Assembly (NCBI RefSeq): GCF_963921235.1
Contig: NC_086097.1
Span: 42,904,001 to 42,968,000 of the forward strand
Length of the DNA stretch: 64,000 nucleotides
Source of the DNA: Mobula hypostoma
Taxonomy: Eukaryota
Direction of reading: 5' to 3'
Shown: positions 5,177-50,500 of the stretch, piece by piece
How positions within the stretch are numbered: the first letter of the stretch is position 1
Layout: every line of letters begins with the position of its first letter
Made by a program: the position numbers and the translations under genes
Notes under the pieces: model-generated
Database searches by the model: none
What the model was told of the DNA's origin: nothing
What the model saw: only the letters and a program-made list of their open reading frames with translations

Positions 5177-5212
5177 AGTCGACGTTTCAGGCTAAGACCC
5201 TTCGTCAGGACT
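5177..5212 (-). ncRNA. Minimal type-I hammerhead ribozyme motif
   Basis: Reverse complement AGTC CTGACGA AGGGTCTTAGCCT GAAA CGTC GACT; intact core with stem I AGTC/GACT. Confidence 0.8.
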
Positions 5213-5505
5213 AACTGAAGGAAGAGTGAGTAAGGGATTTGAAAGTTGGAGGGGGAGGGGGAGATCCAAAATGATAGGAGAAGACAGGAGGGGGAGGGAT
5301 AGAGCCAAGAGCTGGACAGGTGATTGGCAAAAGGGGATACGAGAGGATCATGAGACAGGAGGTCCGGGAAGAAAGACAAGGGGGGGGGACCCAGAGGATG
5401 GGCAAGAGGTATATTCAGAGGGACAGAGGGAGAAAAAGGAGAGTGAGAGAAAGAATGTGTGCATAAAAATAAGTAACGGGTGGGGTACGAGGGGGATGTG
5501 GGGCC

Positions 5506-6863
5506 TTAGTGGAAGTTAGAGAAGTCGATGTTCATGCCATCAGGTTGGAGGCTACCCAGACGGAATATAAGGTGTTGTTCCTCCAACCTGAGTGTAGCTT
5601 CATCTTTACAGTAGAGGAGGCCGTGGATAGATATGTCAGAATGGGAATGGGATGTGGAATTAAAATGTGTGGCCACTGGGAGATCCTGCTTTCTCTGGCG
5701 GACAGAGCGTAGATGTTCAGCAAAGCGGTCTCCCAGTCTGCGTCGGGTCTCACCAATATATAAAAGTCCACATCGGGAGCACCGGACGCAGTATATCACC
5801 CCAGTCGACTCACAGGTGAAGTGTTGCCTCACCTGGAAGGACTGTTTGGGGCCCTGAATGGTGGTGAGGGAGGAAGTGTAAGGGCATGTATAGCACTTGT
5901 TCCGCTCACACGGATAAGTGCCAGGAGGGAGATCATTGGGGAGGGATGGAGGGGACGAATGGACAAGGGAGTTGCGTAGGGAGTGATCCCTGCGGAATGC
6001 AGAGGGGGGGGAGGGAAAGATGTGCTTAGTGGTGGGATCCCGTTGGAGGTGGCGGAAGTTACGGAGAATAATATGTTGGACCCGGAAGCTGGTGGGGTGG
6101 TAGATGAGGACCGGGGGAACCCTATTCCTAGTGGGGTGGCGGGAGGATGGAGTGAGAGCAGATGTACGTGAAATGGGGGAGATGCGTTTAAGAGCAGAGT
6201 TGATAGTGGAGGAAGGGAACCCCCTTTCTTTAAAAAAGGAAGACATCTCCCTCGTCCTAGATTGAAAAGCCTCATCCTAAGAGCAGATGCGGCGGAGATG
6301 AAGGAATTGCGAGAAGGGGAAGGCGTTTTTGCAAGAGACAGGGTGAGAAGAGGAATAGTCCAGAAGCTGTGAGAGTCAGTAGGCTTATAGTAGACATCAG
6401 TGGATAAGCTGTCTCCAGAGACAGAGACAGAAAGATCTAGAAAGGGGAGGGAGGTGTTGGAAATGGACCAGGTAAACTTGAGGGCAGGGTGAAAGTTGGA
6501 GGCAAAGTTAATAAAGTCAACGAGTTCTGCATGCGTGCAGGAAGCAGCGCCAATGCAGTCGTCGATGTAGTGAAGGAAAAGTGGGGGACAGATACCAGAA
6601 TAGGCACGGAACATAGATTGTTCCACAAACCCAACAAAAAGGCAGGCATAGCTAGGACCCATACGGGTGCCCATAGCTACACCTTTAGTTTGGAGGAAGT
6701 GGGAGGAGCCAAAGGAGAAATTATTAAGAGTAAGGACTAATTCCGCTAGACGGAGCAGAGTGGTGGTAGAGGGGAACTGATTAGGTCTGGAATCCAAAAA
6801 GAAGCATAGAGCTTTGAGACCATCCTGATGGGGGATGGAAGTATATAAGGACTGGACATCCAT
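5506..6863 (-). pseudogene. Penelope-like RT-thumb-GIY-YIG ORF, 5'-truncated and disrupted
   Basis: ORF tracks 5829..6863 and 5506..6246; frameshift near 6360 and premature TAG near 6278. Confidence 0.9.
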
Positions 6864-7859
6864 GGTGAAAATAAAGCGGTGGGGGCCAGGGAAATAAAAT
6901 CATCGAAAAGTCTGTATGCTCTCACTCCATCCTCCCGCCACCCCACTAGGAATAGGGTTCCCCTGGTCCTCACCTACCATCCCACCAGCCTCCGGGTCCA
7001 ACATATTATTCTCCGTAACTTCCGCCACCTCCAACGGGATCCCACCACTAAGCACATCTTTCCCTCCCCCCCCCTGCATTCCGCAGGGATCGCTCCCTTC
7101 GCAACTCCCTTGTCCATTCGTCCCCCCCATCCCTCCCCACTGATCTCCCTCCTGGCACTTATCCTTGTAAGCGGAACAAGTGCTACACATACCCTTACAC
7201 TTCCTCCCTTACCACCATTCAGGGCCCCAAACAGTCCTTCCAGGTGAGGCAACACTTCACCTGTGAGTCAACTGGGGTGATATACTGCGTCCGGTGCTCC
7301 CGATGTGGCCTTTTATATATTGGCGAGACCCGACGCAGACTGGGAGACCACTTTGCTGAACATCTACGCTCTGTCCGCCAGAGAAAGCAGGATCTCCCAG
7401 TGGCCACACATTTTAATTCCACATCCCATTCCCATTCTGACATGTCTATCCACGACCTCCTCTACTGTAAAGATGAAGCCACACTCAGGTTGGAGGAACA
7501 ACACCTTATATTCCGTCTGGGTAGCCTCCAACCTGATGGCATGAACATCGACTTCTCTAACTTCTGCTAAGGCCCCACCTCCCCCTCGTACCCCATCTGT
7601 TACTTATTTTTATGCACACATTCTTTCTCTCACTCTCCTTTTGCTCCCTCTGTCCCTCTGAATATACCTCTTGCCCATCCTCTGGGTCCCCCCCCCCCTT
7701 GTCTTTCTTCCCGGACCTCCTGTCCCATGATCCTCTCGTATCCCCTTTTACCTATCACCTGTCCAGCTCTTGGCTCTATCCCTCCCCCTCCTGTCTTCTC
7801 CTATCATCTTGGATCTCCCCCTCCAACTTTCAAATCCCTTACTCACTCTTCCTTCAGTT

Positions 7860-7895
7860 GGTCCTGACGAAGGGTCTTGGCCTGAAACGTCGACT
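7860..7895 (+). ncRNA. Minimal type-I hammerhead ribozyme motif (predicted cleavage after C7891)
   Basis: GGTC CTGACGA AGGGTCTTGGCCT GAAA CGTC GACT. Confidence 0.8.
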
Positions 7896-8136
7896 GCACC
7901 TCTTCCTACAGATGCTGCCTGGCCTGCTGCGTTCACCAGCAACTTTGATGTGTGTTGCTTAAATTTCCAGCATCTGCAGAATTCCTGTTGTCTGCTTTTC
8001 CTTAGTTCACTTTCCTACTTGATTGAGATCTTGATTGTAAACTTTGACAGCTTTCATCACTGTCCATTGTACCATCAATCTTGGTAAACATCCACAGATT
8101 TAGGAATCAAAATTCAAAGTAACTTTATTATCCAAG

Positions 8137-8328
8137 CAACACACATAAAATAACACAGATAAATAATCCCTTACTCACTCTTCCTTCAGTTAGTCCTGAC
8201 GAAGGGTCTCGGCCTGAAACGTCGACTGCACCTCTTCCTAGAGATGCTGCCTGGCCTGCTGCGTTCACCAGCAACTTTGATGTGTGTTGCTTGAATTTCC
8301 AGCATCTGCAGAATTCCTGTTGTTTGCG
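8137..8328 (+). mobile_element. 192-bp non-autonomous Penelope-derived mini-element carrying a hammerhead
   Basis: 13-bp TSD TTTATTATCCAAG at 8124-8136 and 8329-8341; same CAACACACAT left end and GAATTCCTGTTG right end as the large element. Confidence 0.9.
8192..8227 (+). ncRNA. Minimal type-I hammerhead ribozyme motif (predicted cleavage after C8223)
   Basis: AGTC CTGACGA AGGGTCTCGGCCT GAAA CGTC GACT. Confidence 0.8.
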
Positions 8329-8438
8329 TTTATTATCCAAGTATGTATATGTCACCATATACTACCTTGCGATTGAATTTCTTGCAAGCGTTCACAGTGA
8401 ATAGAAAGAAACACAATAGAATCAATGAAAAACCACAG

Positions 8439-9930
8439 AAGCTGCAGGACCAGACGGCATCCCAGGGCAGGTACTCAGGATGTGCACAGCACAACCGGCA
8501 GGTATGTTTACAGATATTTTTAACCTCTCCCTCTCCCAGTGTAGAGTGCCCTCCTGCTTCAAAACATCCACCATTGACACTGTACCTAAAAAGACCAAGG
8601 TAACATGCCCAAACGACAGGCGTCCTGTCACACTCACCTCAATAATAAGCCAATGCTTTGAGAGGCTGGTCAAGGACTACATCTGCAGCTTGCTACCACC
8701 CACACTGGACCCCCTACAATTTGTCTACTGACACAACTGATCAACAGATGATGCAAAGCCACAGCTCTACACACCATCTTTACACATATGGAGAAGAAGG
8801 ATGCTTATGTGAGAATGCTGTTCTTGGACTACAGTTCAGCATTCAACACCATAATTCCCTCCAGGCTCGACAAGAAGCTCAGAGACCTCAGCCTTCACCC
8901 TGCCTTGTGCAGCTGGATCCTGGAATTCCTGTCAGATCACTAACAGGTGGTAAGAGTGGGCTCCCTCACCTCTACCCCTCTGACCCTCAACACAGGTGCC
9001 CCTCAGGGCTGTGTCCTAAGCCCCCTCCTTTACTCTCTGTATACCCATGACTGTGTCGCCACCCACAGCTCCAATCTCCTAATTAAATTTGCTGACGACA
9101 CTACACTGATTGGCCTAATCTCAAATGATAATAAGGCAGCCTACAGAGAAGAAGTCATCACCCTGACACATTGGTATCAAGAAAACAACCCCTCCCTCAA
9201 TGTCACAAAAACAAAGGAGCTGGTTGTGGATTACAGGAGGAATGGAAACAGCCTAACCCCTATTGACAACAATGAATATGAATCTGGGGTTGAGAAGGTG
9301 AACAGCTTCAAGTTCCTTGGCATAAACATCACTGAGGATCTCACGTGGTCTGTGCACACCGGCTGTGTGGTGAAAAAGGCACAACAGCACCTCTTTCACC
9401 TCAGACAGTTGAAGAAGTTTGGTATGGGCCCCCAAATCCTAAGAACTTTCTACAGGGGCACAATTGAGAGCATCCTGACTGGCTGCATCACTGCCTGGTA
9501 TGGGAACTATACTCCCCTCAATCGCAGGACTCTGCAGAGAGTGGTGTGGACAGCCCAACCCATCTGTAGTTGTGAACTTCCCACTGTTCAGGACATTTAC
9601 AAAGACAGGTGTGTAAAAAGTGCCTGAAGAATCATCGGGACATGAGTCACCCCAACCACAAACTGTTCCAGCTGCTACCATCCAGGAAGCGGTACCACAG
9701 CATAAAAGCCAGGACCAACAGGCTCTGGGACAGCTTCTTCCACCAGGCCGTCATACTGATTAATTCTTGCTGATACAATTGTACTTCTTTGTTATATTGA
9801 CTGTCCTGTTGTGCATACTATTTATTATAAATTACCATAAATTACATTTAGACGGAGACGTAACGTAAAGATCTTTACTACTCATGTATATGAAGGATGT
9901 AAGTAATAAATTCAATTCAGTTCAGTTCAA
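8439..9930 (+). mobile_element. Rex1/Babar-clade LINE, 5'-truncated RT, nested in an older minus-strand Rex-like element (~8105-10500)
   Basis: RPVTLTS..CFERL, LDPLQF, GAPQGCVLSPLLYSLYT, KFADDTT; AATAAA followed by a (TTCAA/TTCAG)n tail. Confidence 0.85.
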
Positions 9931-10881
9931 CAAGATTGACAAAAACCAATGTGCAAAAGACAACAAACAGTGCAAGTACAAAAAGAAAAAACAAAGAAAA
10001 TAATAATAATAATAAATAAGCAATAAAAGTCATAAACATGAGGTGAAGATTTTCCTTAGAAGTGAGTCCATAAGTTATAGGAATAGTTCAGGATGGAGTG
10101 ATTGAAGTTGGGTGGTTATCCCCCCGGTTCAAGAGCCTGATGGCTGAGGGGTAATGGCTGTTCCTAAACCTGGTGGTGTGGGTCCTGGGGCTCCTGTACC
10201 TGCTTCCTGATCGCAGCAGCAAGAAGCAAACACGGCCTGTGTGGTGGGGGTCCCTGATGATGGATGTTGCTTTCCTGCAACAATGCTCCCTGTAGATCTG
10301 CTCAATGGAATGGCGGGCTTTACCCATGATGAGCTGGCCGTATCCACTACTTTTTTATCGGCTTTTCCTTTCAAGGGCATGTTTCCATACCAGGCCATGC
10401 TGAAACCTGTCAGTATACTCCCCAGCATATATCTATGGAAGTTTGTTTAAGTTTTATATGACACGCCGAAGCTTTGCAAACTTCTAAGGAAGCAGCACTG
10501 CAGACTGTAACATCAAAACGGCGAGTTTGTCTCCCTCTTCGTTGTTGAAGGAGTGACATTCCTCTCTCCCTTCTCAGTGAGAGAGCCTGAAGGATGTTGA
10601 ACAGTTGGGATAAACAGTATTTGTTGATGTACTGTAGACCATGGTCTCCCTTTGGGGCTTTGCTATTATTTGCATGGTGGGTGGTGAGGAGTGCTGATGC
10701 TTTCTGCTGGAATAAGTGGAGGGAAGGGGAGGGTTGATGCTGCTTATTGCTGCTTGTGCATGGAGGGCGGGGGGCAGGGGGCTTTGGGGTTCTTACATTT
10801 TTTTCTGTCATTCATTCTTTGGGGGTTTTTTGTCTGTTTCGAGGATGTCTGCAGCAAGTCAGGATTTCAGGTTGTATACCA

Positions 10882-22340: not shown

Positions 22341-22454
22341 ATATCTGCATTCATACTAGCAACTTGTTTATGTGCTAGGCGTCCAAGGGAATGCTGTATT
22401 CTCCAGTAGTCCAGAATTATGTCTACAGTGAGCGATCATTTTATTACAGATACT

Positions 22455-22643: not shown

Positions 22644-22721
22644 GTGCGTGTATTCTTATATAACTTATCATATTAACTTTATAAAGCCTAGAATATATTT
22701 TTAATGAATATCTCCTTGCAG

Positions 22722-26598: not shown

Positions 26599-27099
26599 AT
26601 TTCATTGAAAGGAGAATTGTGAAGGCAGTATTTTGAAGCAGTTCCAAATTGTTTAAAAGTGACAAGCATATGCGTGGGTTAAAGATTTATCTCTAATAAA
26701 AATTTGCTAAAGGATAAAGTGGAAGGATTCAGAAAGGTGAAAAGAAGTTAATACTGGGAAGAGTTTAAAGAAGGTAGACATACTTTATAGAGGAGAAATC
26801 CATCAGTTAAAAGTGAACTAACTATAACTATGTTCCTGAATAAAGAGAGCAAGACACATAAAATGCTGGAGGAACTTGGCAGGACAGGTGATATCTCTGA
26901 AGAAGAATAAGCAGACAACAGAAGTGCTGCCTGACCTACTGAGTTCCTCCAGCATTTTGTATTTGTTGCTCTGGATTTCCAGCAACTGCAGAATGTATTG
27001 GGTCCTAAAAATAAAGTTGCACTGTATAGAATCTAGAAAGTAAAAAGTAAATTTCAAGTCATATAAGTCAGTGATAATAAATCTGATTATAATTCTGAG

Positions 27100-29309: not shown

Positions 29310-31807
29310 TTTGATAATTCTGTGTTTTCATATGTAATTGTTCAAACAAATTTAAAAATAAGTAGTGCTGCTTATTTGCATACAACTGGAACGCTCCTCC
29401 TCCAGTAAAGTCAAAATGAACTTGGGTGCTGTACCTAAGTTATTCATAGAATGTTAGGAAATGAGATTAGGGGAGGATAAATCAACTACTTGTGAGAAGC
29501 AGAGAAAGAAGGGTTATAGTAATTGGACTGTAGAGGTATCTATTTTGATTCACAGAGACTGAAGATACATGGCAATCATGTCTATGCTGATAATTCCTAT
29601 TATTGTAATAAATGTCAAAAAGAAATATCTTATTTGCTATTTCAAAATAGTCACATAAACTGCTCATGTACAGTCTTAATCCAGTTTTACTACTGCACCG
29701 TGATAAAAATCAGCTCAGGTATTCAATACCTACTACTTTAACAATGGCGGTTGAACTGGACTTGAAATAGCACTTTTAATTCTGTCTTGAACAGTATGAA
29801 AGTAAAGAATGAGACACAAGATACTACAGTTGCAGGAATCTGGAGCAAAAAATAAGCTGCTGGAGGAACTTAGCAGTTTGAGCAGCATCTTTTTTTGGGG
29901 GTGGGGCGCGGGTGAGGGATGTAACAAATCATTGACTTTTTGGTCAAGACCCTGCATCGGGACTGAGGTGACTAGGTTGGGATTGGTGTGGAGTGCTGAG
30001 CGTTCAGACGGGATGAAGTGAGTGGAGAAGTTGAGGCAGTTGGTGTGATGGCAGTTAGAAATGAAAAGCTCGACAGATGTGGTGCTCAAAAGAAAGGGGA
30101 GTGTTGGAGATCTGAAAAAGAGCTTTCAGTGAGGGGAGAGGAAAAGAGCACCATTTTGCTGCACAGTAGAGTGGGCAAACATGACAGGCCCAGGATTCAT
30201 CATGCTGGGGCACAAGAGTACAAAAGTAAGACCTTGGCAGATGATTAACCACTCGGCATCAAAAGCGGGGGAGGTCAGGTGGGGTGATGAAGACCTGACA
30301 GGCAATGGGGCAAAGCCTAGGTCCAGAAGCAAGAGACTAATGGGAAGGGAGGGTGAGATGGGGGGAAGGGGAGGGTTAGGGGAAGAAGAGAGAGGAGCGG
30401 TGCTGCAGGTAGGATACTAGGTGGGGGGAGGGCAAGGGGCCCATGGTGAGAATCGTGGCATGGGAAAAGGGAGTAAGATCCAGTGGAGTTGTGAGCCTGG
30501 AACTGAGCAAGCTTTTGAGCCTTCTGAGCTGATACGGCAGAGGTTGCAGAAGAATTTCAGACCCTGGTACATCTGAGATGGTGGAGCATGGGATGTGGAG
30601 GGAAAACTGTGGGGAGAAGTGATGAATTGCATGGACGTACCTGAGAGCCTGGCTGGGGGAAAATCCAGGAAAGCGAGGTCCCAGGGCTGCTGGAGGGAAA
30701 CAAAGGAATGTCGGAGTATGGGATGTAAAGGGAAAACTGGGGAGAAGTGATGAGTTGAATGCACATACTTGAGATCCTAGCTGGGGGAAAAACTGCAAAA
30801 AATAGAAATAGAGCTCGAAGCTTGCAGAACAAGATGGCGATGAAGACAAGTCCTAATGAAAGTTGTGGCTGTAGTAATGAATTTTAATAAGAATGTCTGA
30901 AGAGCAGGGGCAGCAGTGAGAGGGAGTTGGAAAACTGCTGTTGAAGAGATGTAGAAAATCTCTTCAAAATCAGCATGTCTTGAGACTTTGCAGTGAAGTT
31001 GCAAAAGTGAAAGGCAGATGATGGAATCTGGAGCATGACCAAATAACAGGAGGATTCCTGATGCAGAGTCTCAACAAGTAATGTTGAAAATTCTGCCCCA
31101 CCTTCCCAATTACCCTACTGAAGATCATGTCCTACCAGCAGTTTGATTTTTATTTTGAAAATCAAAGTCAGTTGACCTTGGGTGATTTGGATTTCAATAC
31201 CTTGGGTTGACATTTTTTTTGGCTTGAATGTGTTAAGTATCTTAAGTACTTGTAATGAGGAAAGGTTGAACTATTCCACTATAGCTTCCACTTTTACATG
31301 TACAGCTTTACAGGAAGTACATTTCAACAAGGAATGTTATATAGATTGGTTATACCTCTCTATCTCCTTCCGATAATCCACTATCCCATTGTTGAGAAAT
31401 CCCAGTCGTTTAATATCTGGTTCACTGGGCCCCTGTTCCTATTGAGATAGAGTTATAACCCATCTATACAACATTCCTTGCTGGAATGGACTTCCTGTAT
31501 GCTATTTTTAAAGACAATTTCAAAAATATTATTCCGATAATTGGAAAATTTGCCTATCCTGCTCAGCAAAGCGAAGGTGCCAGAAAATGAACCCTAATAC
31601 AAGTATTGACACTCAAATGACATACATGTTTCAGTAATGTTAAAATCTGATTCCATTCTGTTTTCTGGGGAATAATTACTTGATGGAGCATAGTTCGGAA
31701 TGGTAAAACAAATGTCTTATCAATAAATCAAAGTTAATATTTTTAAAATAGAACTTAATTGTAAACAATGAACAAATATTTCATAAACTGTTTTCTTTTG
31801 TTAACAG

Positions 31808-32535
31808 GCAGATGTGAATAATTTGAGGAATTTCCTTTCAGCTTTAAGGCTGGCTCACCGAGGTAGTGAAATAGACACTATATCACTGTCCAACCTGGCT
31901 CCAGTGAAAACCTCTGAAGTCGAAAAACCAAAAACCAAAATGGTAATAACATCAAGAAAGGATTATCCTATTACTACAAATTTTCCATACTCTCTAGAAC
32001 TTCTGCAGGTTTCCTTCTGCAAACTGGCACGTGTGGATATGCGAATGCTTTGCCTACGAAGACTACGGAAACTGGATCTCAGTAATAACCACATACGCAA
32101 ACTTCCAGCTACCATTGGAGACCTTACTTGCCTATCTGTGCTTGTTTTGCATAATAACTACCTGGAAACATTCAGCGTTGGATTGTGTAATTCCACTTTG
32201 CAAAAATCTCTGCAATTTTTGGACTTGAGCCACAACCATTTACGAGCTCTCCCTCTTCAGTTCTGTCAACTGCAAGAACTCGTTCATCTAAAGCTCGACG
32301 ATAATGAGTTAGTCCAACTTCCTTACAGGATAGGACGGCTAACTAAACTACGCTTCCTTACAGCAGCACGCAACAAGTTGCCTTATCTTCCATGTGATTT
32401 CCAGTTGCTATGCCTTGAGAATGTGGATCTATTTGGAAATCCCTTTGAACACCCCAACCCCCTTATTCCAACAATCCATTTGCAGATTCCAATGACTCTA
32501 TTAGAATCTGCAGCAAGAGCAACAATAAATTACAG
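31808..32535 (+). CDS. LRR1: LRR1 coding exon 3 (LRR array)
   Basis: ADVNNLRNFLSALRLAHRG... with LxxLxLxxN repeats; acceptor ttaacAG, donor TACAG|GTAAAA. Confidence 0.96.
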
Positions 32536-33007
32536 GTAAAAGATCTTAACTTTTCTTAAAATTATGATTATTAATGAGTTTTCTGTAGTTTAGCAGCAAT
32601 GTGAGATGGTCAATTGAGCATATTTAAAGTTACTTTCAAGAGATAATTAGTATATAGATCTAACTGCATTTCACACCTCCCACCATCCCGCAATTTTTCT
32701 TATTTCTGTTTGTCAAAACCCAAGGGTTCTAGACCAACTGCAATATCACACTAAATGAGATTTACCTGAACCTTCCTTTTCAATAGTCTTGACTAATCAA
32801 ACTGTTGTAGTTTAGTAAGTTCATCCAAATTAGGGGGGGTAATGCTTTACGTTAGAACCTCTTTGTTTTCTCCTTTCTCCCAAGGTGAATGCGATGTGGC
32901 AACAACCTAATGACATTGATAGGGGAACTATAAATTCAAATTCATGGTTTGGATGAGCCTCTAATCTTCAAATGATACCTAGATGCCTCAAAAAGATTAG
33001 AGTTTTT

Positions 33008-36000
33008 CTTTCTTTCTCAATATTTTTATTAATTTCTTACATAAAAGAATACAGAGTACAGTAGGATATATAATATATATCGATACAATATATTGAAATC
33101 ACAGATAAAGTGTAATTACCCCATATCCATATAAAATTAAATTTAAACATAATATTGAAAAGAGATAATTTTATTATACAAAAAATCTAAACCCACTACC
33201 AGAAAAAAAAGCTGTTAGGCTTTTAAAAAAAAAAGGAAGAAATCCTTAACATAGAGTAAAACATATTATTAGCCAACATACGTGTTTAATAGCAAATTAA
33301 AGATTTTGAAAATAATTCAAAAATGGTCCCCACAATATTAAAAAATCTTGTCTATGTTCAGAAATTGAACAGTGAATCTTCTCTAAATTAAACATGACGT
33401 AACATCATGTAACCAATGAGTATGAGTAGGTGGAGTGGGATCTTCCACTTTAGCAACAATGTCCTCCTGGCTATGAGAGAAATAAAGGCCAAAATACGCA
33501 GATCATGTGTCTCCAAAATAATATCATTTCCTCCAACAATACCAAATAAGGCAGTCAAAGGATTAGGTTTAAACTTTACTTTAAAAAGCACCGAAAAAGT
33601 TTGAAATACTTCCTTCCAATATTTTTCAAGACTCAGACAAGTCCAAAACATATGGATTAGTGAAGCTTCTCTATTATTACACCTATCACAAAAGGGAGAT
33701 ATAGCCAAATAAAATGATATCTTTAGACATATGGGCCCTATGAACCACTTTAAATTGTAGAAGGGAATGACGGGCATATAACGATGCGGTATTAACTAAT
33801 TTAAAAATTTCATTCCAAGTGTCCTCAGAAATTGAAATCTGTAAGTCTTGTTCCCAAAGATTTTTAATTTTATCTAAATGAATATTTCTCATTCCCAACA
33901 ACATACCATAAATATTAGATATAGATGCATTATGGAAGGGTTTCAAATTAAAAATTATATCAAGTAAATTTTTATCTAGACTTTTAGGAAATGTATGTAC
34001 TTGAGAACGCAAAAAATCTCTAATTTGTAAATATCGAGAAAAATGAGTTCTTGGTAGGCTATACTTAACTGACAGTTGTTCAAATGAAGAGATACTGCCT
34101 CCAACAAACAAATCATGAAAACATTTAATACCCAATCTATGCCACTCTTTAAAAACTACATCAGACATAGAAGGTTTTAAAAAAAAATAGAAAAAATGGG
34201 ACTGATAAGTGAAAAACTCAATAAACCAAAACATTTTCTAAATTGTACCCAGATCCTTAAAGTGTGTTTAACTACAAAATTATCAGTTAAATTACTTAAA
34301 GATAAAGGAATTGAGGATTTGAGAAGAGGAATGATAGAGAATTTATTAACAGAGTTAGCTTCTAAAGAAACCCAGACCAGACAGTCCTCTCGATTAATAT
34401 AATATAACCAAAACGTAAGATTCGGTATATTGACCGCCCAGTAATAAAACCTAAAATTGGGTAAGGCTAAACCTCCATTCTTTTTAGCTTTTTGAAGATG
34501 AATTTTATTTAATCGAGAGATTTTATTTTTCCATATGTAAGAATATATAATAGAATTCAAAGAATCAAAGAAGGATTTCGGGATGAAAACAGGTATGGCC
34601 TGAAATAAATATAAAAATTTAGGCAAAATATTCATTTTAATGGAATTGATACGGCCAATTAACGATAAAGAGAGGGGTGACCAATTTGAAAGTGCCTTCT
34701 TAACATAATTCAGAAGTGTAAAAAAAATTTTCTTTAAAAGGGAATTTATAATTCCTAGTAATTGTTGCGCCTAAGTAAGTAAATTGATTTCTTACTATTT
34801 TAAAAGGAAGGTTAATATTAACTAATACCAAATTATTCAAAGGAAAATGTTCACTCTTATGAAAGTTAAGTTTATATCCAGAAAACTGACCAAAGCAGGA
34901 AAGTAAAGAAAGTAGAGAAGGTAAAGAAGACTCCATATTAGAAATGTAGAGCAAAAGGTTATCAACATAAAGTGAAACTTTGTGGGTAATATCCTTCCTT
35001 AAAATGCCAGTGATATCATTAGATTCCTGGAAAGCAATAGCTAAAGGTTCTAAGACCAAATCAAAAAGCAAAGGACTCAAAGGACAACCTTGTCTAGTTC
35101 CACAATAAAGTTTAAATGGTTTAGCGTACTGACGGTTAGTAAGAACCTGAGCGGAGGGAGATAAGTAAAATAATTTAATCCATTGAATAAAATCGGGCCC
35201 AAAGTTAAATTTTTCTGAAGTTTTAAATAAATAATTACATTCAACCCGATCAAAGGCTTTCTCAGCATCTAAGGATATCACACATTCTGAAATCTCTTTA
35301 GAAGGAGAATAAATAACATTCAATAAATGACGAATATTAAAGTGGGAGTATTGATTTTTGATAAATCTAGTCTGATCATCAGAGATAATAGATGGCAAAA
35401 TATTTTCAATCCTACGAGCCAGAAGTTTAGATAAAATTTTAGTATCAACATTAAGTAAGGAATTAGGTCTGTAAGAACAGCATTCAATTGGGTCCTTATT
35501 CTTTTTAAGAATAAGTTAAATAGAGGCTTCATAAAAAGATTGTGGCAACTTGCCTAATTTAAAAGAGTCAGAAAGGACTGAATATAAACGAGGTATAAGC
35601 AAAGAGGAAAAAGCTTAATAAAACTCTCCAGAAAATCCATCAGGACCCGGAGCCTTCCCCGAGTGCAAAGAGTGAAAAACATCGGCAATTTCCTCATAAG
35701 AAATTGGTTGATCCAACAATTTTCGAATATCATGAGAAAGTGTAGGAATGTTTAATCGATCTAAAAAATTATTCATTAATTATCTTTAGGAGGATCAGAA
35801 TTATAAAGTTTAGAGTAGAATTCTCTAAAAGCATTGTTTATTTCTAAATGATCAGATGTTTTATCACTATTAGCTTTACAAATTTCTTTAATTTGACATT
35901 TAACTAAAAGGTCTTTAACTGGTTAGCTAATAGTTTACCTGTTTTATCTCCATGAACATAAAACTGACTTTTATCTTTTAAAAGTTGCATTTCAATTGGA

Positions 36001-40114: not shown

Positions 40115-40420
40115 GACCATCCCCTTTTCTTTCTCCTTGGGCCTCTTGTCCCATGATCCTCTCATATCCCTTTTGCCAATCAACTGTCCAGCTCTTGGCT
40201 CCATCCCTCTCAGTCCTGTCTTCTATCATTTCAGATCTCCCCCTCCTCCTCCTACTTTCAAATCTCTTACTAACTCTTCTTTCAGTTAGTCCTGACGAAG
40301 GGTCTCAGCCCGAAACATCGACTGTACCTCTTCCTAGAGATGCTGCCTGGCCTGCTGCGTTCACCAGCAACTTTTATGTATGTTGCTTGAAATTCCAGCA
40401 TCTGCAGATTTCCTCGTGTA
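40115..40420 (+). mobile_element. Penelope-like 3' end fragment with hammerhead motif at 40288-40323
   Basis: Highly similar to 7700-7990; AGTC CTGACGA AGGGTCTCAGCCC GAAA CATC GACT (stem III G>A). Confidence 0.85.
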
Positions 40421-40939: not shown

Positions 40940-41480
40940 GCGGCCATGACATTGCTTCCCTGTAGCGCCAACGTCATAAAGTAGAGACCCACTAATGTGA
41001 GGTGCGACGCTCTCGGGAAGAGAGAAGCGCCAGCGAGTGACAGATGAGTCGATCAATCACGGCTGGACTTGTGTTCCGCTGCGCACCAATCAGCACGGAG
41101 AGGCGACAGGAGGAGGCAGGCGGTCTCCGGGGAGCTGGATGAGCAGAGGCGGGCGCGGGGCCGTTGCCCGCAGGATGCTGGTGTCGGTGTGAATGTGAGG
41201 AGGGGCGAAGGACGGTACGGATTCGGCCGCTGAGAGTGGGTGGGCGGCACCGCGGGCCGGCTCCCCGCTCTCCCCGGATCGGATATTGCGCTGCGGAGGG
41301 TGGCGAGCGGGAGGGAGTGCCGGTCGCCTCCCGTCCTTGGCTGGAAATGATCCGGAGCGCGGCCGGCACCGCACCGCGGCCGTGCCTTTATTAATTGGAA
41401 GCTGCCCGGTGCCGCCAGCGATATCACCCCGTGTTTTGGTCTGTTTCAGTCAGGAGAAGGGCGCCGCCAGCTCGCCGGAC
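40940..41480 (+). promoter_or_regulatory. MGAT2 CpG-island promoter and 5' UTR
   Basis: CpG-rich; CCAACGTCA at 40968-40976; CCAAT at 41086; GC boxes. Confidence 0.75.
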
Positions 41481-41483
41481 AAC

Positions 41484-42788
41484 ATGAGGTTCCGCATCTA
41501 CAAGAGGAAAGTCCTGGTGCTGGCGCTCGTCGTGCTGGTGGCCGCCTTCGGCTTCTGGACGAGCGGCAAGCAGAGGAAACCGGAGGCATTTCCGAGGGAC
41601 GCCGAGACACCGCGTTCACCGCGAGTTGGCGACGGGAAGGTGAGCCGGAAAGTTTCCAACGAGTCTCAGCCGGGTAGGTTGGAGAGGCCGGAGATCGACA
41701 ACCTGACGCTGGGTTACCGAGGGATCGTCTACCAATTAAACTTCGATCAGGTTGTCAGAAACCGGGAGAGCATAAGGACACGTCCTCCCGACGACGTGGT
41801 GGTGGTGATCCAAGTGCACAACAGGCCAGAATACCTGCAGTTACTCGTGAACTCGCTCAGAAAAGTCAAAGGCATAGAAAATGTCTTGTTAATATTTAGC
41901 CATGACTTCTGGTCGCCGCAGATCAACCAGATTGTGGCCAGCATCGATTTTTGTCAAGTACTACAAATATTTTTTCCGTTCAGTATCCAGTTGTATCCTA
42001 ACGAATTCCCAGGGCACGATCCCAAGGACTGTCCACGTGACATAAGCAAGGCGGATGCTTTCAAATTGGGCTGTATCAATGCTGAGTATCCAGATTCATT
42101 TGGCCATTATAGAGAGTCCAAATTCTGTCAAACCAAACACCACTGGTGGTGGAAGTTGCATTTTGTTTGGGAGAAAGTCAAGGTTTTGGAAAATCATAAG
42201 GGTCTAGTGCTGTTCATTGAAGAGGACCACTATCTGTCACCTGATTTTTATCATGTTCTGAAAAATATGTGGAGTCTGAAAGCTGAAAATTGTCCTGACT
42301 GTGACATACTGTCTCTTGGGGCATATATGCGAGTTAGTAATTTTGGAGATAAAACAAATAAAGTTGAGGTGAAAACCTGGCGATCAACGGAGCATAACAT
42401 GGGCATGGCTATGACCAGAGAGACCTATCAAAAATTAATACAGTGCACAGATACTTTTTGCAAATATGATGACTATAACTGGGATTGGACATTACAGCAT
42501 TTAACAGTGTCCTGTTTGCCTCAATATTGGAAAGTTATGGTTTGTGAAGCTCCTCGGATTTACCATGCTGGTGATTGTGGTATGCATCACAAGAAAGTGT
42601 GCATGCCATCTGTTGAAGTTTCTAAAATAGACAAAATTATAAGTAGTAATATGCAGCACTTATTTCCAGAAACAATGACAATAAGCAAAGTGTATCCATC
42701 GGGTGCAATTACTCCACACGTGAAAAATGGAGGCTGGGGAGATATAAGGGACCATGAATTGTGTGCAAGCTATCGCCGTCTGCAGTAA
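41484..42788 (+). CDS. MGAT2: Alpha-1,6-mannosylglycoprotein 2-beta-N-acetylglucosaminyltransferase (GnT-II), 434 aa
   Basis: MRFRIYKRKV + TM anchor; QVHNRPEYL, TKHHWWWKLHFVW, EEDH, YDDYNWDW, NGGWGDIRDHELC; uninterrupted CDS; AATAAA at 44071. Confidence 0.98.
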   Translation: MRFRIYKRKVLVLALVVLVAAFGFWTSGKQRKPEAFPRDAETPRSPRVGDGKVSRKVSNESQPGRLERPEIDNLTLGYRGIVYQLNFDQVVRNRESIRTRPPDDVVVVIQVHNRPEYLQLLVNSLRKVKGIENVLLIFSHDFWSPQINQIVASIDFCQVLQIFFPFSIQLYPNEFPGHDPKDCPRDISKADAFKLGCINAEYPDSFGHYRESKFCQTKHHWWWKLHFVWEKVKVLENHKGLVLFIEEDHYLSPDFYHVLKNMWSLKAENCPDCDILSLGAYMRVSNFGDKTNKVEVKTWRSTEHNMGMAMTRETYQKLIQCTDTFCKYDDYNWDWTLQHLTVSCLPQYWKVMVCEAPRIYHAGDCGMHHKKVCMPSVEVSKIDKIISSNMQHLFPETMTISKVYPSGAITPHVKNGGWGDIRDHELCASYRRLQ

Positions 42789-45700: not shown

Positions 45701-47579
45701 TCTCCTTGTTCCTCTCCAAAGACATTGGAACTAAGTTATATAGCACTGGAAAATTTTGCAATGCCATTTCTTTATGCTTTTAGTATTTGGGCAAGCCTTA
45801 GCTTGCTGCAGATTGTCTTAACAGACTCCCATGGGACCACTTTTGAGTGACTTGATAGTTCAAGCCACCTTTATGCAGATTACAGTTTACCTGCTCCTCT
45901 TAAAGGGGTGGTGTAGTCAAGCTGAATGAAGTAGTGGGAGTGGAAATCATTCCAAAGTTGGTCACAGTTTCCAGAAGTGCTGTTAGGATAGAAGCAACAG
46001 CTACACTGCAGTGCTCTGATACAATAGAAACCTTGGGCAATGATGGGAGAAGGTTTTGCATTCAGACTACAGTAGCTGAAGCAGCAGAAAAAAGAGGCAG
46101 TGGCTGTGGAAATAAGCATAAGGACGGGAGTGCCACAGAATGTTCGATGACATGTTCCAATTGCAACAGTAGTTTCACGCACTTCATAAGCAACTGTATC
46201 AAGTCACTAATAAGCCTTTTAAATGTCCCACCAGATACATGAATTATACCAAGCTTTACATCTATATCCCACACGGTGTGTTCACTGCCAAGTCAAAAGG
46301 ATGAATGTTCGTCATGGTTGCTCCTATGGTCAAATCCAAGACAAATGGCAGACATGAGACCATTGATAATGACGGTGCTCAGACCTAATCCTCCTCCCTT
46401 AGTCTCAACTCTTCACAGCATAATCACATCTGATTTATAAGATACAGGTGATACAAACATGCATCTTTCACTGCTCCCAACTCAAATCTGTAATTTGTCT
46501 CAGCATAAACATAATCTTGTGGCTTTCTCCTTTTAGAAAAATAACAATGGGAACCTTCAGGAATAAGGAATTGCTATTGTCTTCATTTTAAAGTGTGGTA
46601 CCATATCTTTTCTGATAGCTCCACCAGTAGAGAACCTCCTCACCCCTCGCTTTATCAACTGTACCTCTTGGCTCTTCACTTCCTCAGTTGCCAGAATGAG
46701 TTAAACCAGCATAGGTGTTTCAGCAGAGTACGTCTCCACCTGCGATCACCATTTAAGATACTGACAATGTGCCGCGAGGTTAATTAGTCTCTTTTTCATT
46801 TGGAATAGAGGCTCAAAATGGAGAGCCTAGCTGTCATATGCATAATGAACACATTAATAACTCCTTCACATCTGATGCCAACAAGCTACTGTGAATTATT
46901 CATACTTTGTAGTATCAGGAACTTGTATTGTTTGAAAAGCCACATGCTTTTTGCTGCCTGCTGTTTCCTGCCAAGGAAGAAAATGATAAATTCTGCTCTT
47001 CTGAAGTAAATTGCATTTGTGAACTCTAAGCCACAAAATGTTGTAAATATTCCCTGGAAAGAGACAGAAACATTAAAGTTGGTATGATTCTGGTCCTGCG
47101 CAACAGTAGTGGCTGTAGCACGTGGTGCATTTCTGTTGTGATTTTCTGAATAAATTGAAACCTTATGATTTCCCTTTGCTGTGGTGCATGAAAGATAATT
47201 GATTCATGAAGACCTTTTGTAAATAGGGCCTGAGGGTTCTTCTCAATATTTCCCTGATTCTACTCAGTAGGTCTTGGTCATACTGGGCTGTCATGCTGAA
47301 CGCCTTTGAAAATGGTCACCAGAGGTTTAGGTTGGATACACAATACTTACTTCTACAACACTACATTTAAATACCACAAAATCAGATAGTATTGTAATTT
47401 AATATTCTAGAAGTCAATCAACAATAAACAAGCAATACATTGATGGTCTTTTTAAATAGTGCAAAGAAAGAATTTTCCTTTTGCTATCCATTGATCCTCT
47501 GCATGTCTTGTACATGTGCGCCTGCAGTTTTGGGGGAAATTCTTCTCCAACACAATTATGTTTTCTTTCTGCAGTGTGG

Positions 47580-48090
47580 TGATCAGAATTCCTGGTGGCC
47601 AAACATTTTAATTTTGATTCCCATTCCTGTCCATGTCGATCCATGGCCTCCTCTTGTCCCAAGATGTAGCCTCAGCATGGAGGAACACCTTATATTCTGT
47701 CAGGGTACCCTCCAACCTGATGGTACGAATATTGATTTCTCCTTCCGATGAACAAAATCCCGCCCCCCCCCCATTCTGTACCATGACTTTTCACTTCTTC
47801 TGACCTGCCTATTACTTCCTCCTGGGTTCCCCACCCCCTTCCCTTTCTCCTACAGTTCACTCTCCTCTCCTATCAGCTTCTTTCTTCTCCATCCCCTGAC
47901 CTTTCTCGCCCACCTATCACCTTCCTGCTCGCCTCTATCCCCACACCCACCTTTTTATTCTGGCATTTCCCCCTTTCTTCTCAGCCCTGAAGAAGGGTCT
48001 TGGCCTGAAATGTCGACTTTTTTTTTCATTTCTGTAGATGCTGCCCGACCTGCTGAGTTCCTGCAGCATTTTGTGGGTGTTGCTTCAGAA
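47580..48090 (+). mobile_element. Older Penelope-like 3' fragment (GIY-YIG C-terminus + hammerhead motif at 47983-48018)
   Basis: MEEHLIFCQGTLQPDGTNIDFS; AGCC CTGAAGA AGGGTCTTGGCCT GAAA TGTC GACT. Confidence 0.85.
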
Positions 48091-48689
48091 TACAACATGC
48101 CAGCTTTAGTGTGCAACTTTCCAGCTCTTGCATTCTATGATTTTTTTTAAAGAGGAAAGCATTTTTAAACTTAGTGATCTGTACTGCTACCTTTAAACGA
48201 TTTATGGATATATATTCAGAGGTTCTCCACACCACACAATATCTTACTATGTACATGGTATTCCCTCACCTTATTGCAGTTCTTGAAATGCATTACTTAA
48301 CACTTGTCTGGATCGGATTTCATTTGCCGTTTTTCTGTCCATCTCACCAGCCTACTTATGCCGCCCTGAAGCATTTAATGCTTTCATCACCAGTACCACA
48401 CAGCTAAATGTTATAAAATGTGCGGACTTTTTTAAAATCATGTACCATATGTTTAAGTCAATATCATCAATACAAGTAAGTTTATCCCAGCTATTTCTCA
48501 TTGTTCCTTTTTAAAAAACAGAATGAATACAGCACTGAAACATGTTTCTTTGGCTCAAGAGAGATGCCCATCTAAGCTTGACCCTTTTGCCTGCGTTTGG
48601 CCCTTGTGCTTCTAAACTTTTCCTATTCATGTACTTTTCCAAGTATCTTTTAAATGTTATTGTACCTGCCTCAATCACTTTTTATATAC

Positions 48690-49200
48690 AGAGCACAAGA
48701 CATAGGAACAGAATTAGGCCATTCAGCCCATTCCATCATGACTGATCCCAGATCCCACTCAACCCCATACACCTGCCTTCTCGCCATATCTTCTGATGCC
48801 CTGACCGATCAGTGAATGATCAACTTCTGCCTTAAATATATGCTCAGACTTGGCATCCACCGCAGTCTGTGGCAGAGCATTCCACAGATTTACTACTCTG
48901 CCAAAAAAAATTCCTCTTTACCTCTGTTCTAAAGAGTTGCCCCTCAATTTTGAGGCTGTGCCCTCTAGTTCTGGATATCCCCACCATAGGAAACATCCTC
49001 TCCACATCCACCCTATCTAGTCCTTTCAACATTCAGTAAGTTTCAATGAGATCCACCCCCCCCCCCCGTCTTCTCCCAAATTCAAATGAGTACAGGGCCA
49101 AAGCTGCCAAAAAGTCCCCATATGTTAACCCCTTCATTCCTGGAATCATCCTCATGAATCTCCTATGGACTATCTCCAATGACAACACATCCTTTCTGAA
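48690..49200 (-). mobile_element. CR1 LINE 3' fragment
   Basis: MLKGLDRVDVERMFPMVG.SRTRGHSLKI. Confidence 0.85.
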
Positions 49201-50274
49201 GAAGTTGCTCTTCAGGTCTCTTAAATCTTTGCCCTGTCACCTTAAACCTATAGCCTCTAATTAGAATTATGCCCTCCAATTAAAATTGTCCTCTCATAAA
49301 GACAGAAAAGAGCCTTACCCACTTGCTCCATCTCTCAGCAAGCATTTCCTTTTCGACCTCTGAAAGAACCCTCCTTAATTGTCCACCTGCTTTTTATATA
49401 ATTATAAACATCTTTGATTTTACTCACTAGTATTTTTGGACTTCTGTAAATAAAATCTCAAATTAAATAACCTAATATTTTAATTATTTACATGGCTTGA
49501 AGTTGTGATTTTTTAAAAAATCCAAATCTGTACAAGTCATTCAGTAGTCTACCGTTTATCAAGAACAACTGATTTCATATAGTTCCAGGAATGTGTCATA
49601 AACTTGGTTATTGTTGAATCTCTCCCAAATAATTTTAGCTGACAGAAGCATGGCATAAAAAGTAAAATGGATTTTTTTTGTTGAAATAGTTTATTTTTGG
49701 CTTTTAGATGATACTTTGATTAATTTCTGATCACAATTATTTGATTGAATCACTAATTAAATGTTTTTAAAATAATTGAATGTTTACAAATTGTGACTAA
49801 GATGCAGTGATAGTTTGGCCTAATTTCTAAGCTGTTAAACTAGAGGTGCTATTAAAGATGGCATTAGTATGTACAAGCTCTAAGTACAGCTGCTATCAGT
49901 AAAATTAACTTAAGCTACACCTTTCAGTCTCTTCCTGCAGGATTCCATAATCAGACGTAAGCACGATACTATGAATTGTATTTAAAGGGAACGTTAAAGA
50001 GGAAGCTTTAAAAGGGATTCTATAGCTGTGAAACAGCAGGAACCAAAAAGTGTAAGTTCTGATTCTGTGGTGCAGTAGAATTTGATTGGAAAGTAGAAGA
50101 TTCCAAAGATAGGTAGGGTCAGTATTTAAAGATAATTTTGTTTTTTTTTTTCCGAACTCTGCGTTAAATAATAGGAAGACATAAAGCTACGTAAATTTTG
50201 TCTGTGATAGCTTATTGAGGCCATTGGATTCATAGATAAAGATGAATAGTACAATCATCTTAAGTGAAAATAAA

Positions 50275-50500
50275 AGAACTCTACTCAGATAGTGGAAAAG
50301 AGTAAACAGTTGACATTTCGAGGTAAGATCCTTCATCAGTCCTGATGAAGGGTCTTGGCCTGAAACGTCGACCATTTACTCTTTTCCATAAATACTGCCT
50401 GGCCTGCTGAGTTCCTCCAGCATTTTGTGTGTTCCTCTAAATCGTTTACTGTTCCTCTTTTCACAGATGTTGTCTAACTTACTAAGTTGTTTCAGCTCTT
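50275..50500. mobile_element. Fold-back Penelope-derived mini-element with back-to-back hammerhead motifs
   Basis: Palindromic centre CCTTCATCAG-TC-CTGATGAAGG (50330-50351); plus copy intact at 50338-50373, minus copy degenerate at 50308-50339. Confidence 0.75.

What the first reader, a model, noticed from the sequence alone, without database searches (positions are those of the whole stretch)
5177..50373. Family of minimal hammerhead ribozymes carried by a Penelope-like element and its derivatives
Seen: the motif AGTC-CTGA(C/T/A)GA-A-GGGTCTYRGCCY-GAAA-CGTC-GACT recurs at 5177-5212(-), 7860-7895, 8192-8227, 40288-40323, 47983-48018 and 50338-50373, with decayed relics near 3520, 29940 and 31050. 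It has the full hammerhead core (CUGANGA, GAAA, GUC cleavage triplet), stem I AGTC/GACT and a G-C-rich stem II. There appears to be an extra A between A9 and G10.1, and stem III is loop-less and palindromic (ACGT). Position 7 varies (C/U/A) as expected for the non-conserved core base. Established: Penelope-like elements carry minimal type-I hammerheads that are thought to cleave as dimers. Inference: this genome holds a very high copy number of ribozyme-bearing repeats (six clear copies in 64 kb).
Basis: partly seen in the sequence, partly recalled or inferred. Interest (0 to 1): 0.85.

Follow-up and report, generated by a model that had tools for sequence, protein, structure and literature searches.

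The report
Penelope retrotransposon minimal hammerhead copies
The repeated motif is the minimal hammerhead ribozyme that Penelope-like retrotransposons are already known to carry near their ends, scattered here by ordinary truncated insertions, so it is real but an expected feature of a known kind of element.

Summary
All six motifs are at the stated coordinates, with none expected by chance.

They are minimal type-I hammerheads with no helix III. They lie about 290 nt downstream of the GIY-YIG endonuclease of a Penelope-like element (PLE), on the coding strand. The element's two alternative 3' ends are 66 and 99 nt further on.

- **Intactness:** four copies pass a general min-HHR descriptor (5177-, 7860, 8192, 50338). 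Two have disabling substitutions (40288, 47983).
- **The "extra A":** this, the loop-less palindromic ACGU and the 4-5 bp helix I are published hallmarks of PLE hammerheads (PMC4209133), not anomalies.
- **The "derivatives":** these are 5'-truncated PLE copies. A 2,876-bp tail-out inverted pair has a 14-bp TSD and a 192-bp insertion has a 13-bp TSD. Both architectures are published (PMC8557442, PMC11167929).
- **The 332-nt spacing:** it comes from two independent insertions, not a retrozyme.
- **Conservation:** across three PLE lineages the 36-nt hammerhead is 89-92% identical, against 26-29% upstream of it. No two-sided covariation was found.
- **Not tested:** cleavage, since no usable RNA data were available.

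Earlier notes show the scan has flagged the same motif many times elsewhere in this genome. Verdict: a new member of a known kind, of low interest.

The parts
5115..6916 (-). Left arm of one composite PLE insertion. It is a 5'-truncated PLE copy with the RT C-terminal half, the GIY-YIG EN, the hammerhead and the short 3' end (ending ...GTGTGTTG, no tail).
   Evidence: Inverted-repeat arms 5115-6160 and 6917-7957 are 96-99% complementary. Pfam and translations support the ORFs. A 14-bp TSD flanks the composite.
5829..6863 (-). PLE reverse-transcriptase fragment with a YIDD motif, frameshifted relative to the EN ORF.
   Evidence: RVT_1 is weak (E 0.004). Translation. The nearest Atlas clusters carry RVT_1/HTH_animal/GIY-YIG, score 0.98.
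5506..6246 (-). ORF with the PLE C-terminal GIY-YIG endonuclease: Cys-rich motif, then GVIY...LYIG...R...E.
   Evidence: GIY-YIG scores 21.6 bits against a cut-off of 22.6. Motifs are visible in the translation. Atlas GIY-YIG clusters score 0.96.
5177..5212 (-). Intact minimal hammerhead, 294 nt downstream of the EN stop. Its cleavage site is 66 nt from the element's end.
6917..7990 (+). Right arm of the same composite insertion. It is an inverted, shorter 5'-truncated PLE copy with the EN (7244-7570), the hammerhead and the long 3' end carrying the optional tail (about 7958-7990).
7860..7895 (+). Intact minimal hammerhead. Its helix I begins with G/U where the genome-wide consensus has A-U.
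   Evidence: Position 7860 reads A in 94% of laid contig depth.
5101..5114 (.). Left copy of the 14-bp target-site duplication TCTGCTTTTCCTTA. The right copy is at 7991-8004.
8137..8328 (+). Independent 192-bp PLE insertion. A short inverted piece of the 3' module (8137 to about 8164) is followed by a direct copy that starts 27 nt upstream of the hammerhead and ends with the tail. The 13-bp TSD TTTATTATCCAAG lies at 8124-8136 and 8329-8341.
8192..8227 (+). Intact minimal hammerhead, identical to the genome-wide family consensus.
40121..40414 (+). 5'-truncated copy of the same PLE family (85-93% identity) with the tail. No TSD was found.
40288..40323 (+). Hammerhead with G10.1-C11.1 but a broken helix III palindrome (ACAU).
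47595..48105 (+). 3' part of an older, different PLE lineage. It has a GIY-YIG coding remnant (47595-47741, 75% identical to 5519-5676), a hammerhead and the 3' module.
47983..48018 (+). Hammerhead with N7 = A, one helix I mismatch, and AUGU in place of ACGU.
50264..50510 (.). Third lineage: a head-to-head foldback of two hammerhead-bearing ends. The decayed one is at 50308-50343(-) and the intact one at 50338-50373(+). A candidate 9-bp TSD lies at 50255/50511.
50338..50373 (+). Intact minimal hammerhead with N7 = U and a 3-bp helix I.
3518..3553 (+). Decayed hammerhead relic with 9 mismatches, head-to-head with a 3'-module fragment at 3450-3510(-).
29829..29967 (-). Decayed hammerhead plus 3'-module relic.
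   Evidence: nhmmer E 1.2e-7. Sequence.
7908..7957 (+). Second conserved block of the PLE 3' module, downstream of the hammerhead and a variable linker of about 16-20 nt. It is the most abundant part of the element in genomic contigs. It ends at the short 3' terminus and is inferred to hold the site where reverse transcription starts.
   Evidence: Alignment. 67-71% identity between lineages. Depth peaks there. Analogy to PMC11167929.

Best explanation
These are copies of the minimal, helix-III-less type-I hammerhead that canonical endonuclease-bearing Penelope-like elements (PLEs) carry in their terminal (pLTR) region.

**Layout on the RNA (shown).** On the PLE sense RNA the motif reads: helix I 5' strand AGUC, core CUGANGA, one unpaired A, a 4-bp helix II (G/U, G-C, G-C, U/G) with a tetraloop, GAAA, then CG, UC, the cut, and helix I 3' strand GACU. 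It lies about 290 nt after the endonuclease stop codon. The two alternative 3' ends of insertions lie 66 and 99 nt after the predicted cut.

**How the copies spread (shown).** The copies were spread passively by PLE retrotransposition. Most are 5'-truncated, dead-on-arrival insertions. Several are tail-out inverted pairs, as expected if both target strands prime cDNA synthesis.

**How the ribozyme would work (inferred from published work on relatives).** A single copy cannot form helix III. The palindromic A15.1-C-G-U16.1 of two copies pair with each other to build a shared helix III. Cleavage after GUC then occurs in multimeric or tandem PLE transcripts, probably helped by the PLE protein. 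This would trim the element's RNA out of longer transcripts. The dispersed truncated copies are most likely inert passengers.
For: **The motif is real.**
- The motif and coordinates are exact, with no chance matches.
- A sequence-independent min-HHR descriptor finds 4 intact motifs against 0 in 200 shuffles.

**It belongs to a PLE.**
- RT and GIY-YIG are on the same strand upstream of the motif in two arms and in an older lineage.

**The hammerhead is the most conserved stretch.**
- Between three PLE lineages it is 32-33 of 36 positions identical. The upstream flank is 26-29%, the linker 50-56% and the next block 67-71%.
- N7 is the one core base that differs in all three lineages.

**Variation among genomic copies fits the fold.**
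- Among thousands of genomic contigs only 3 of 36 positions vary at 5% or more. All three changes are compatible with the structure: helix I A-U/G-U, loop 2, and 11.1 U/C.
- Contigs of other families diverge exactly at the hammerhead's borders, at 7861 and 7895/7896.

**The insertion anatomy matches published PLE anatomy.**
- TSDs of 14 and 13 bp, the inverted arrangement, and a tail at one end only all match PMC8557442.
- The geometry matches the Anolis element, where RT start sites lie 85-92 nt past the hammerhead cut and a 30-40 nt tail lies between two start sites (PMC11167929).

**The motif's traits are published.**
- The unpaired base between 9 and 10.1, the palindromic 15.2/16.2 and a helix I of 4-5 bp are listed traits of PLE min-HHRs (PMC4209133).
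Against: - No cleavage evidence exists. No RNA-seq of the organism was served, and the runs that hold the sequence look like DNA.
- There is no two-sided covariation in the window's 8 copies, and shuffles match the observed pairing.
- Within the young family the density of variable sites in the hammerhead is the same as in the flanks, 3 in 36 against 8-9 per 100. Conservation is shown only between lineages.
- The closing pair of helix II is G/U in most copies rather than the canonical G-C.
- Rfam hammerhead models do not match, even at E up to 10.
- Published min-HHRs cleave poorly in vitro (PMC4209133). In Anolis, hammerhead mutants still insert, and no RNA-seq reads end at the cut (PMC11167929).
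- No pile-up of 5' junctions at the cut site appeared among the best-supported loose ends.
Confidence: 0.87

Rival explanations
1. The block is conserved for a reason other than RNA self-cleavage. It might be a binding or recognition site for the PLE protein, or part of the pLTR promoter. On this reading the hammerhead-like core is an evolutionary leftover with no catalytic role in this lineage.
For: - In Anolis, hammerhead mutants do not affect insertion in vitro, and no reads end at the cut (PMC11167929).
- Min-HHRs cleave weakly in vitro (PMC4209133).
- Helix II here is weak, with two wobble pairs out of four.
- In the main family N7 = C lets GACG pair with CGUC in the predicted monomer fold, which would be an inactive conformer.
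Against: - Conservation starts and stops exactly at helix I.
- The invariant positions coincide with the catalytic core, while N7 is free to vary.
- The same core is kept in PLEs from animals to fungi (PMC4209133).
- C3/G8 compensatory mutants restore protein-assisted cleavage in Anolis (PMC11167929).
Confidence: 0.1
2. The two same-strand hammerheads 332 nt apart (7860 and 8192) form a non-LTR retrozyme, a tandem unit that is excised and circularised as a small RNA.
For: - There are two intact same-strand min-HHRs.
- The spacing falls in the range published for animal retrozymes (PMC7229834; bioRxiv 10.64898/2026.07.22.740005).
Against: - Tandem Repeats Finder reports no array there.
- Only 167 nt of the 332 are repeated.
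- The second copy is a separate 192-bp insertion with its own 13-bp TSD. The first lies inside an insertion with a different 14-bp TSD.
Confidence: 0.02
3. The resemblance to a hammerhead is a chance feature of an abundant repeat.
For: Rfam models are silent and no covariation was found.
Against: - All core boxes, both helices, the bulge and the palindrome occur together.
- The descriptor finds 0 hits in 200 shuffles.
- The motif sits in the published position of a PLE.
- It is the best-conserved stretch between three lineages.
Confidence: 0.01

Closest known systems
Minimal hammerheads (min-HHRs) of metazoan Penelope-like elements (Cervera & De la Pena 2014, PMC4209133; dimer cleavage by Lunse, Weinberg & Breaker 2017, as cited in PMC6765202)
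   Same: - Type-I topology with no helix III or loop 3.
- Palindromic 15.2/16.2 (CG).
- One unpaired base between A9 and G10.1.
- Helix I of 4-5 bp.
- G10.1 kept.
- Located in the terminal repeat region of an RT + GIY-YIG element.
- Thousands of dispersed, mostly solitary copies, some in opposite-strand pairs.
   Different: - Helix II is short, at 4 bp with two wobble pairs. The Schistosoma families described have 7-8 bp.
- 11.1 is mostly U, giving G/U instead of the highly conserved G-C. C appears in about 13-21% of contig depth.
Poseidon element PAc of Anolis carolinensis (Frangieh et al. 2024, PMC11167929)
   Same: - A hammerhead shortly upstream of the site where reverse transcription starts.
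- Two alternative 3' ends separated by an optional tail of about 30-40 nt.
- Both target strands are used, which fits the tail-out inverted insertions seen here.
   Different: - In PAc the start region is an AC-rich stem-loop inside the start of the ORF. Here the short end lies in a GU-rich run (...GUGUGUUG).
- No full-length element or ORF start is present in the window.
- Protein-assisted cleavage was shown there and is untested here.
Animal non-LTR retrozymes (Cervera & De la Pena 2020, PMC7229834; Li et al. 2026 preprint)
   Same: They carry type-I hammerheads related to PLE pLTRs and are probably mobilised by PLEs.
   Different: Retrozymes are head-to-tail tandem arrays that give circular RNAs. 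The copies here are solitary 5'-truncated PLE ends with their own TSDs, and no tandem array is present.

Membership tests
PLE minimal hammerhead (min-HHR) | Catalytic boxes CUGANGA, GAAA and U16.1-H17 in type-I order | tested here: met
   Present in all six copies. A8 and U16.1-C17 are also kept. The relics have lost them.
PLE minimal hammerhead (min-HHR) | [quoted passage not shown] | tested here: met
   An A is present in all 8 aligned copies. The bulged register pairs 7 of 8 copies at the closing pair, against 5 of 8 for the register without a bulge. The common U-to-C variant at 11.1 fits only the bulged register.
PLE minimal hammerhead (min-HHR) | G10.1-C11.1 closing pair of helix II | tested here: inconclusive
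   G10.1 is invariant. 11.1 is U in 5 of 6 copies (a G/U wobble) and C in copy 40288 and in 13-21% of genomic contig depth.
PLE minimal hammerhead (min-HHR) | No helix III hairpin, and palindromic 15.2/16.2 so that two copies can share a helix III | tested here: met
   ACGU in 4 of 6 copies. Copy 40288 has ACAU (broken). Copy 47983 has AUGU (wobble only).
PLE minimal hammerhead (min-HHR) | Helix I of about 4-5 bp, open-ended | tested here: met
   4 bp plus a U/G extension in the main family, 3 bp in copy 50338. 84% of cells are paired.
PLE minimal hammerhead (min-HHR) | Compensatory changes in helices across family members | tested here: not met
   No pair shows a change on both sides in the 8 copies. 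There are only one-sided, wobble-compatible changes, and shuffles do as well. The sample is too small and too similar to decide.
PLE minimal hammerhead (min-HHR) | Self-cleavage after H17, as dimers or with protein help | not testable with these tools
   No RNA-seq raw reads of the organism were served. The laid runs behave like DNA.
Rfam Hammerhead_1 and other hammerhead covariance models | Match to the curated covariance model | tested here: not met
   No hit at the gathering threshold in the window, and none at E up to 10 in 7600-8500. This is expected, because those models include a helix III hairpin.
Canonical EN+ Penelope-like element | RT followed by a C-terminal GIY-YIG endonuclease on one strand | tested here: met
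   Both Pfam scores are below the curated cut-offs, but the motifs are visible. Atlas neighbours carry RVT_1/HTH_animal/GIY-YIG.
Canonical EN+ Penelope-like element | 5'-truncated copies, an adjacent inverted truncated copy, and a 30-40 nt tail at one end only | tested here: met
   Inverted arms 5115-6160 / 6917-7957. The tail is only on the right arm. TSDs. These features are described in PMC8557442.
Canonical EN+ Penelope-like element | Direct partial-tandem pLTRs flanking a full-length ORF | tested here: not met
   The window holds no full-length ORF and no direct pLTR pair. All copies are truncated.
Non-LTR retrozyme | Head-to-tail tandem repeats, each with a hammerhead | tested here: not met
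   No tandem array. The 332-nt spacing is due to two insertions with different TSDs.

The most novel reading that the evidence does not exclude
This ray PLE lineage may have evolved a gated hammerhead. Three features could keep single copies off until two copies pair or the PLE protein remodels the RNA:
- a weak helix II closed by G10.1/U11.1;
- N7 = C, which lets G5-G8 pair with C15.2-C17 in the monomer;
- a pyrimidine tract just upstream that is complementary to the 5' half of the core in all three lineages.

In addition, the roughly 100-190 nt hammerhead-plus-3'-module may be the minimal unit that the PLE machinery can mobilise.
Probability: 0.1. Interest if true: 0.5.

Novelty: new member of a known kind. 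Interest (0 to 1): 0.2.

Why it matters
It adds a cartilaginous-fish example to the known PLE hammerhead class. An earlier, unchecked note of the scan calls the species a devil ray.

The window also gives clean genomic examples of published PLE anatomy:
- a tail-out inverted double insertion with a TSD;
- two alternative 3' ends;
- extreme 5' truncation.

These fit the both-strand priming and internal initiation shown in vitro for the Anolis element. Beyond annotation, the value is small. The family could serve as a high-copy data set for testing whether PLE hammerheads are under selection, and whether cleavage happens in vivo, which is still open for all metazoan PLEs.

Tried and rejected
- **Rfam.** Searches at the gathering threshold and at E up to 10 around two copies gave no hammerhead hit. 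The only hit was a spurious PrrB/RsmZ match on the opposite strand.
- **Metagenome scans.** The strict motif gave nothing. A looser one gave 8 microbial contigs with no helix I and no 3' module, so these are chance matches. No outside copies were gained for covariation.
- **Sequencing runs.**
  - The 'RNA?' runs that hold the sequence carry thousands of contigs at huge summed depth, and one is flagged as probably DNA.
  - Restricting to RNA-Seq libraries left only a wastewater metagenome.
  - Transcription, cleavage ends and circular joints could therefore not be assessed.
- **Structure of the downstream block.** RNAalifold on the downstream block plus tail from 7 copies predicted no consensus structure.
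- **Thermodynamic folding.** Folding of monomers and homodimers gave non-hammerhead minimum-energy folds and stem-II-swapped dimers. Energy models do not capture the hammerhead core, so this was not used as evidence either way.
- **Retrozyme reading.** Rejected for the 332-nt pair.
- **Excess conservation within the young family.** Rejected. The density of variable sites is the same inside and outside the hammerhead.

Full report
**Observation.**
- The degenerate motif occurs six times at exactly the coordinates given. None is expected in 100 dinucleotide-preserving shuffles. The 36-nt units were recovered again by a fuzzy search, which found nothing in shuffled sequence.
- I wrote a general min-HHR descriptor that does not fix the helix II sequence. 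It requires CUGANGA, an optional one-base bulge, helix II of at least 3 bp, GAAA, a self-complementary 15.2/16.2, U-H, and helix I of at least 3 bp.
- The descriptor finds four intact motifs: 5177-5212(-), 7860-7895, 8192-8227 and 50338-50373. It finds none in 200 shuffles.
- The copies at 40288 and 47983 fail it. The first has ACAU where the palindrome ACGU should be. The second has AUGU and a helix I mismatch.
- A profile search confirms the relics near 3520 and 29940. It gives only a weak match near 31050. It adds an inverted decayed partner at 50308-50343(-), a relic at 1488-1555(-) and a copy truncated inside stem II at 495-579(-).

**What carries the motif.**
- On the minus strand, upstream of the 5177 copy, lie an RT fragment with YIDD (5829-6863) and a GIY-YIG endonuclease (5506-6246). 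The endonuclease has the Cys-rich motif and GVIY...LYIG.
- Both Pfam scores are just under the curated cut-offs. The nearest Atlas clusters nevertheless carry RVT_1, HTH_animal and GIY-YIG together.
- An RT followed by a C-terminal GIY-YIG endonuclease is the defining architecture of canonical PLEs (PMC8557442).
- A second endonuclease ORF on the plus strand (7244-7570) precedes the 7860 copy.
- The two copies are arms of one inverted repeat, 5115-6160 against 6917-7957, 96-99% complementary.
- The whole 2,876-bp structure (5115-7990) is flanked by a 14-bp target-site duplication.
- The arms point their 3' ends outward. Only the right arm has the extra tail of about 33-42 nt.
- The copy at 8192 belongs to a separate 192-bp insertion (8137-8328) with its own 13-bp duplication. 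That insertion starts with a short inverted piece ending at the same ...GTGTGTTG terminus as the left arm above.
- The copy at 40288 lies in a 294-bp 5'-truncated copy of the same family.
- The copy at 47983 lies downstream of a 75%-identical endonuclease remnant of an older lineage.
- The copy at 50338 is one side of a small head-to-head foldback of a third lineage.
- The 'derivatives' are therefore ordinary truncated PLE insertions, not a separate class of element.

**Comparison with published PLE anatomy.**
- Craig et al. describe high 5' truncation, an adjacent inverted truncated copy, and a 30-40 bp tail often present at only one end. They place hammerheads in the pLTRs (PMC8557442).
- Frangieh et al. 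showed for the Anolis Poseidon element that the protein cuts and extends both DNA strands. Reverse transcription starts at two internal sites 85-92 nt past the hammerhead cut, and the tail is the stretch between those sites (PMC11167929).
- Here the predicted cut lies 66 nt from the short end and 99 nt from the long end.
- The tail-out inverted insertions with TSDs are what both-strand priming would leave. This is my inference; the enzyme's behaviour in this species is not shown.

**The motif itself.**
[quoted passage not shown] They also report a helix I of 4-5 bp (PMC4209133).
- The bulged register is favoured here. With it the closing pair forms in 7 of 8 copies, against 5 of 8 without a bulge.
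- The only common variant in that part of the motif among genomic contigs is U-to-C at 11.1, at 13-21% of depth. That change turns G/U into G-C, whereas it would break an A-U pair in the other register.
- The departure from the published consensus is that 11.1 is mostly U. Helix II is also only 4 bp, with two wobbles.

**Conservation.**
- Between the three lineages the 36-nt hammerhead is 32-33 of 36 positions identical. The 34 nt upstream are at random level (26-29%), the linker at 50-56%, the next block at 67-71% and the tail at 21-37%.
- N7 is C, A or U in the three lineages.
- I laid the contigs of two genome-skim-like runs on 7760-8000 at 85% likeness or more. This gave 7,524 and 4,326 contigs.
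- Only three of the 36 hammerhead positions vary at 5% or more: helix I A/G (A-U or G/U), loop 2, and 11.1. Contigs of other families break away exactly at 7861 and at 7895/7896, which are the borders of helix I.
- Two cautions apply. Within this young family the density of variable sites is no lower in the hammerhead than in the flanks. No pair shows a two-sided compensatory change in the window's copies, and shuffles pair as well as the observed alignment.
- The case for selection therefore rests on between-lineage conservation and on the literature, not on covariation found here.

**Copy number.** Runs of two coded organisms hold about half of the sampled words of 7600-8400. Up to 18,377 contigs lie on 1.4 kb. 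Summed depth is highest on the block downstream of the hammerhead, lower on the hammerhead and much lower upstream. This profile is expected for 5'-truncated retroelements sharing a 3' module. Summed contig depth is not a copy number.

**Function.**
- Nothing here tests cleavage. No RNA-seq of the organism was served, and the runs laid behave like DNA.
- Published work shows low activity of min-HHRs in vitro, only as dimers or with an added helix III (PMC4209133).
- Dimer cleavage is reported by Lunse et al., as cited in PMC6765202. That paper itself is not held in the library.
- Protein-assisted cleavage with C3/G8 rescue was shown in Anolis. There the hammerhead mutants still inserted, and no RNA-seq reads ended at the cut (PMC11167929).
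- My best reading is a dimer- and/or protein-dependent processing ribozyme of PLE transcripts. The dispersed truncated copies would be inert.
- The main rival, at about 0.1, is that the block is kept for another reason in this lineage.

**The 332-nt pair.** The two intact same-strand hammerheads at 7860 and 8192 are not a retrozyme. No tandem array is reported. Only 167 nt are repeated. The two copies belong to insertions with different TSDs. A read-through transcript could still bring two intact copies together, but that would be incidental.

**Earlier notes of the scan.**
- Notes on this genome flag the same motif many times on other DNA. They include a note on tail-out palindromic insertions with 14-15 bp TSDs, which agrees with what I found independently.
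- Notes on this window cover the 332-nt pair and the 192-bp unit with a 13-bp TSD.
- One follow-up note calls the organism a devil ray. I did not test that.

**Verdict.** This is a new member of a well-described kind. Interest is low.

Noticed in passing
window 7848-7874, 47966-47997, 50326-50352: In all three PLE lineages a pyrimidine-rich tract just upstream of helix I (…CCUUC(A/U)…CAG) is complementary to the 5' half of the core (CUGANGAAGG). In the 50338 copy it is a perfect 10-bp palindrome arm. It is predicted to form a hairpin that would sequester the core in two of the three lineages. This could be a competing 'off' structure or a trace of head-to-head junctions.
   Followed up: partly
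window 5177-5212(-), 7860-7895, 8192-8227: In the main family N7 = C makes G5-A6-C7-G8 complementary to C15.2-G16.2-U16.1-C17. The predicted minimum-energy monomer pairs them, which would be an inactive fold.
   Followed up: no
window 3450-3564, 26848-26994, 50264-50510, 8137-8328, 5115-7990: Five PLE insertions in one window are head-to-head (tail-out) inverted pairs with arms truncated at different points. Two have clear TSDs of 13-14 bp. This fits both-strand priming.
   Followed up: partly
window 50442-50495: A decayed second copy of the linker plus downstream block follows the first in tandem after the 50338 hammerhead (nhmmer E 0.26; sequence).
   Followed up: no
window 41286-42788 (+): Intronless MGAT2 (N-acetylglucosaminyltransferase II) ORF, Pfam E 3.5e-162. 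The damaged hammerhead copy at 40288 lies about 1 kb upstream on the same strand.
   Followed up: no
window 31814-32539 (+): Leucine-rich-repeat coding stretch (LRR_4/LRR_8). It is probably an exon of the LRR1-like neighbour of MGAT2.
   Followed up: no
window 51763-55639 (+); 8947-9627 (+); 34700-35398 (-): Unrelated non-LTR retrotransposon remains. One is a GDSL-esterase-type ORF1 followed by an RT ORF of 620 aa. The other two are RT fragments, one with an ALKBH8_N-like match.
   Followed up: no
window 8137-8328: A wastewater RNA-seq metagenome (run X15) holds 36% of the sampled words of the 192-bp unit.
   Followed up: no
window 8149-8273 (-): Sub-threshold Rfam match to PrrB/RsmZ (22.5 bits against a gathering score of 44, E 0.0065) on the strand opposite the hammerhead. 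I judge it a chance match of GGA-rich repeat sequence.
   Followed up: no
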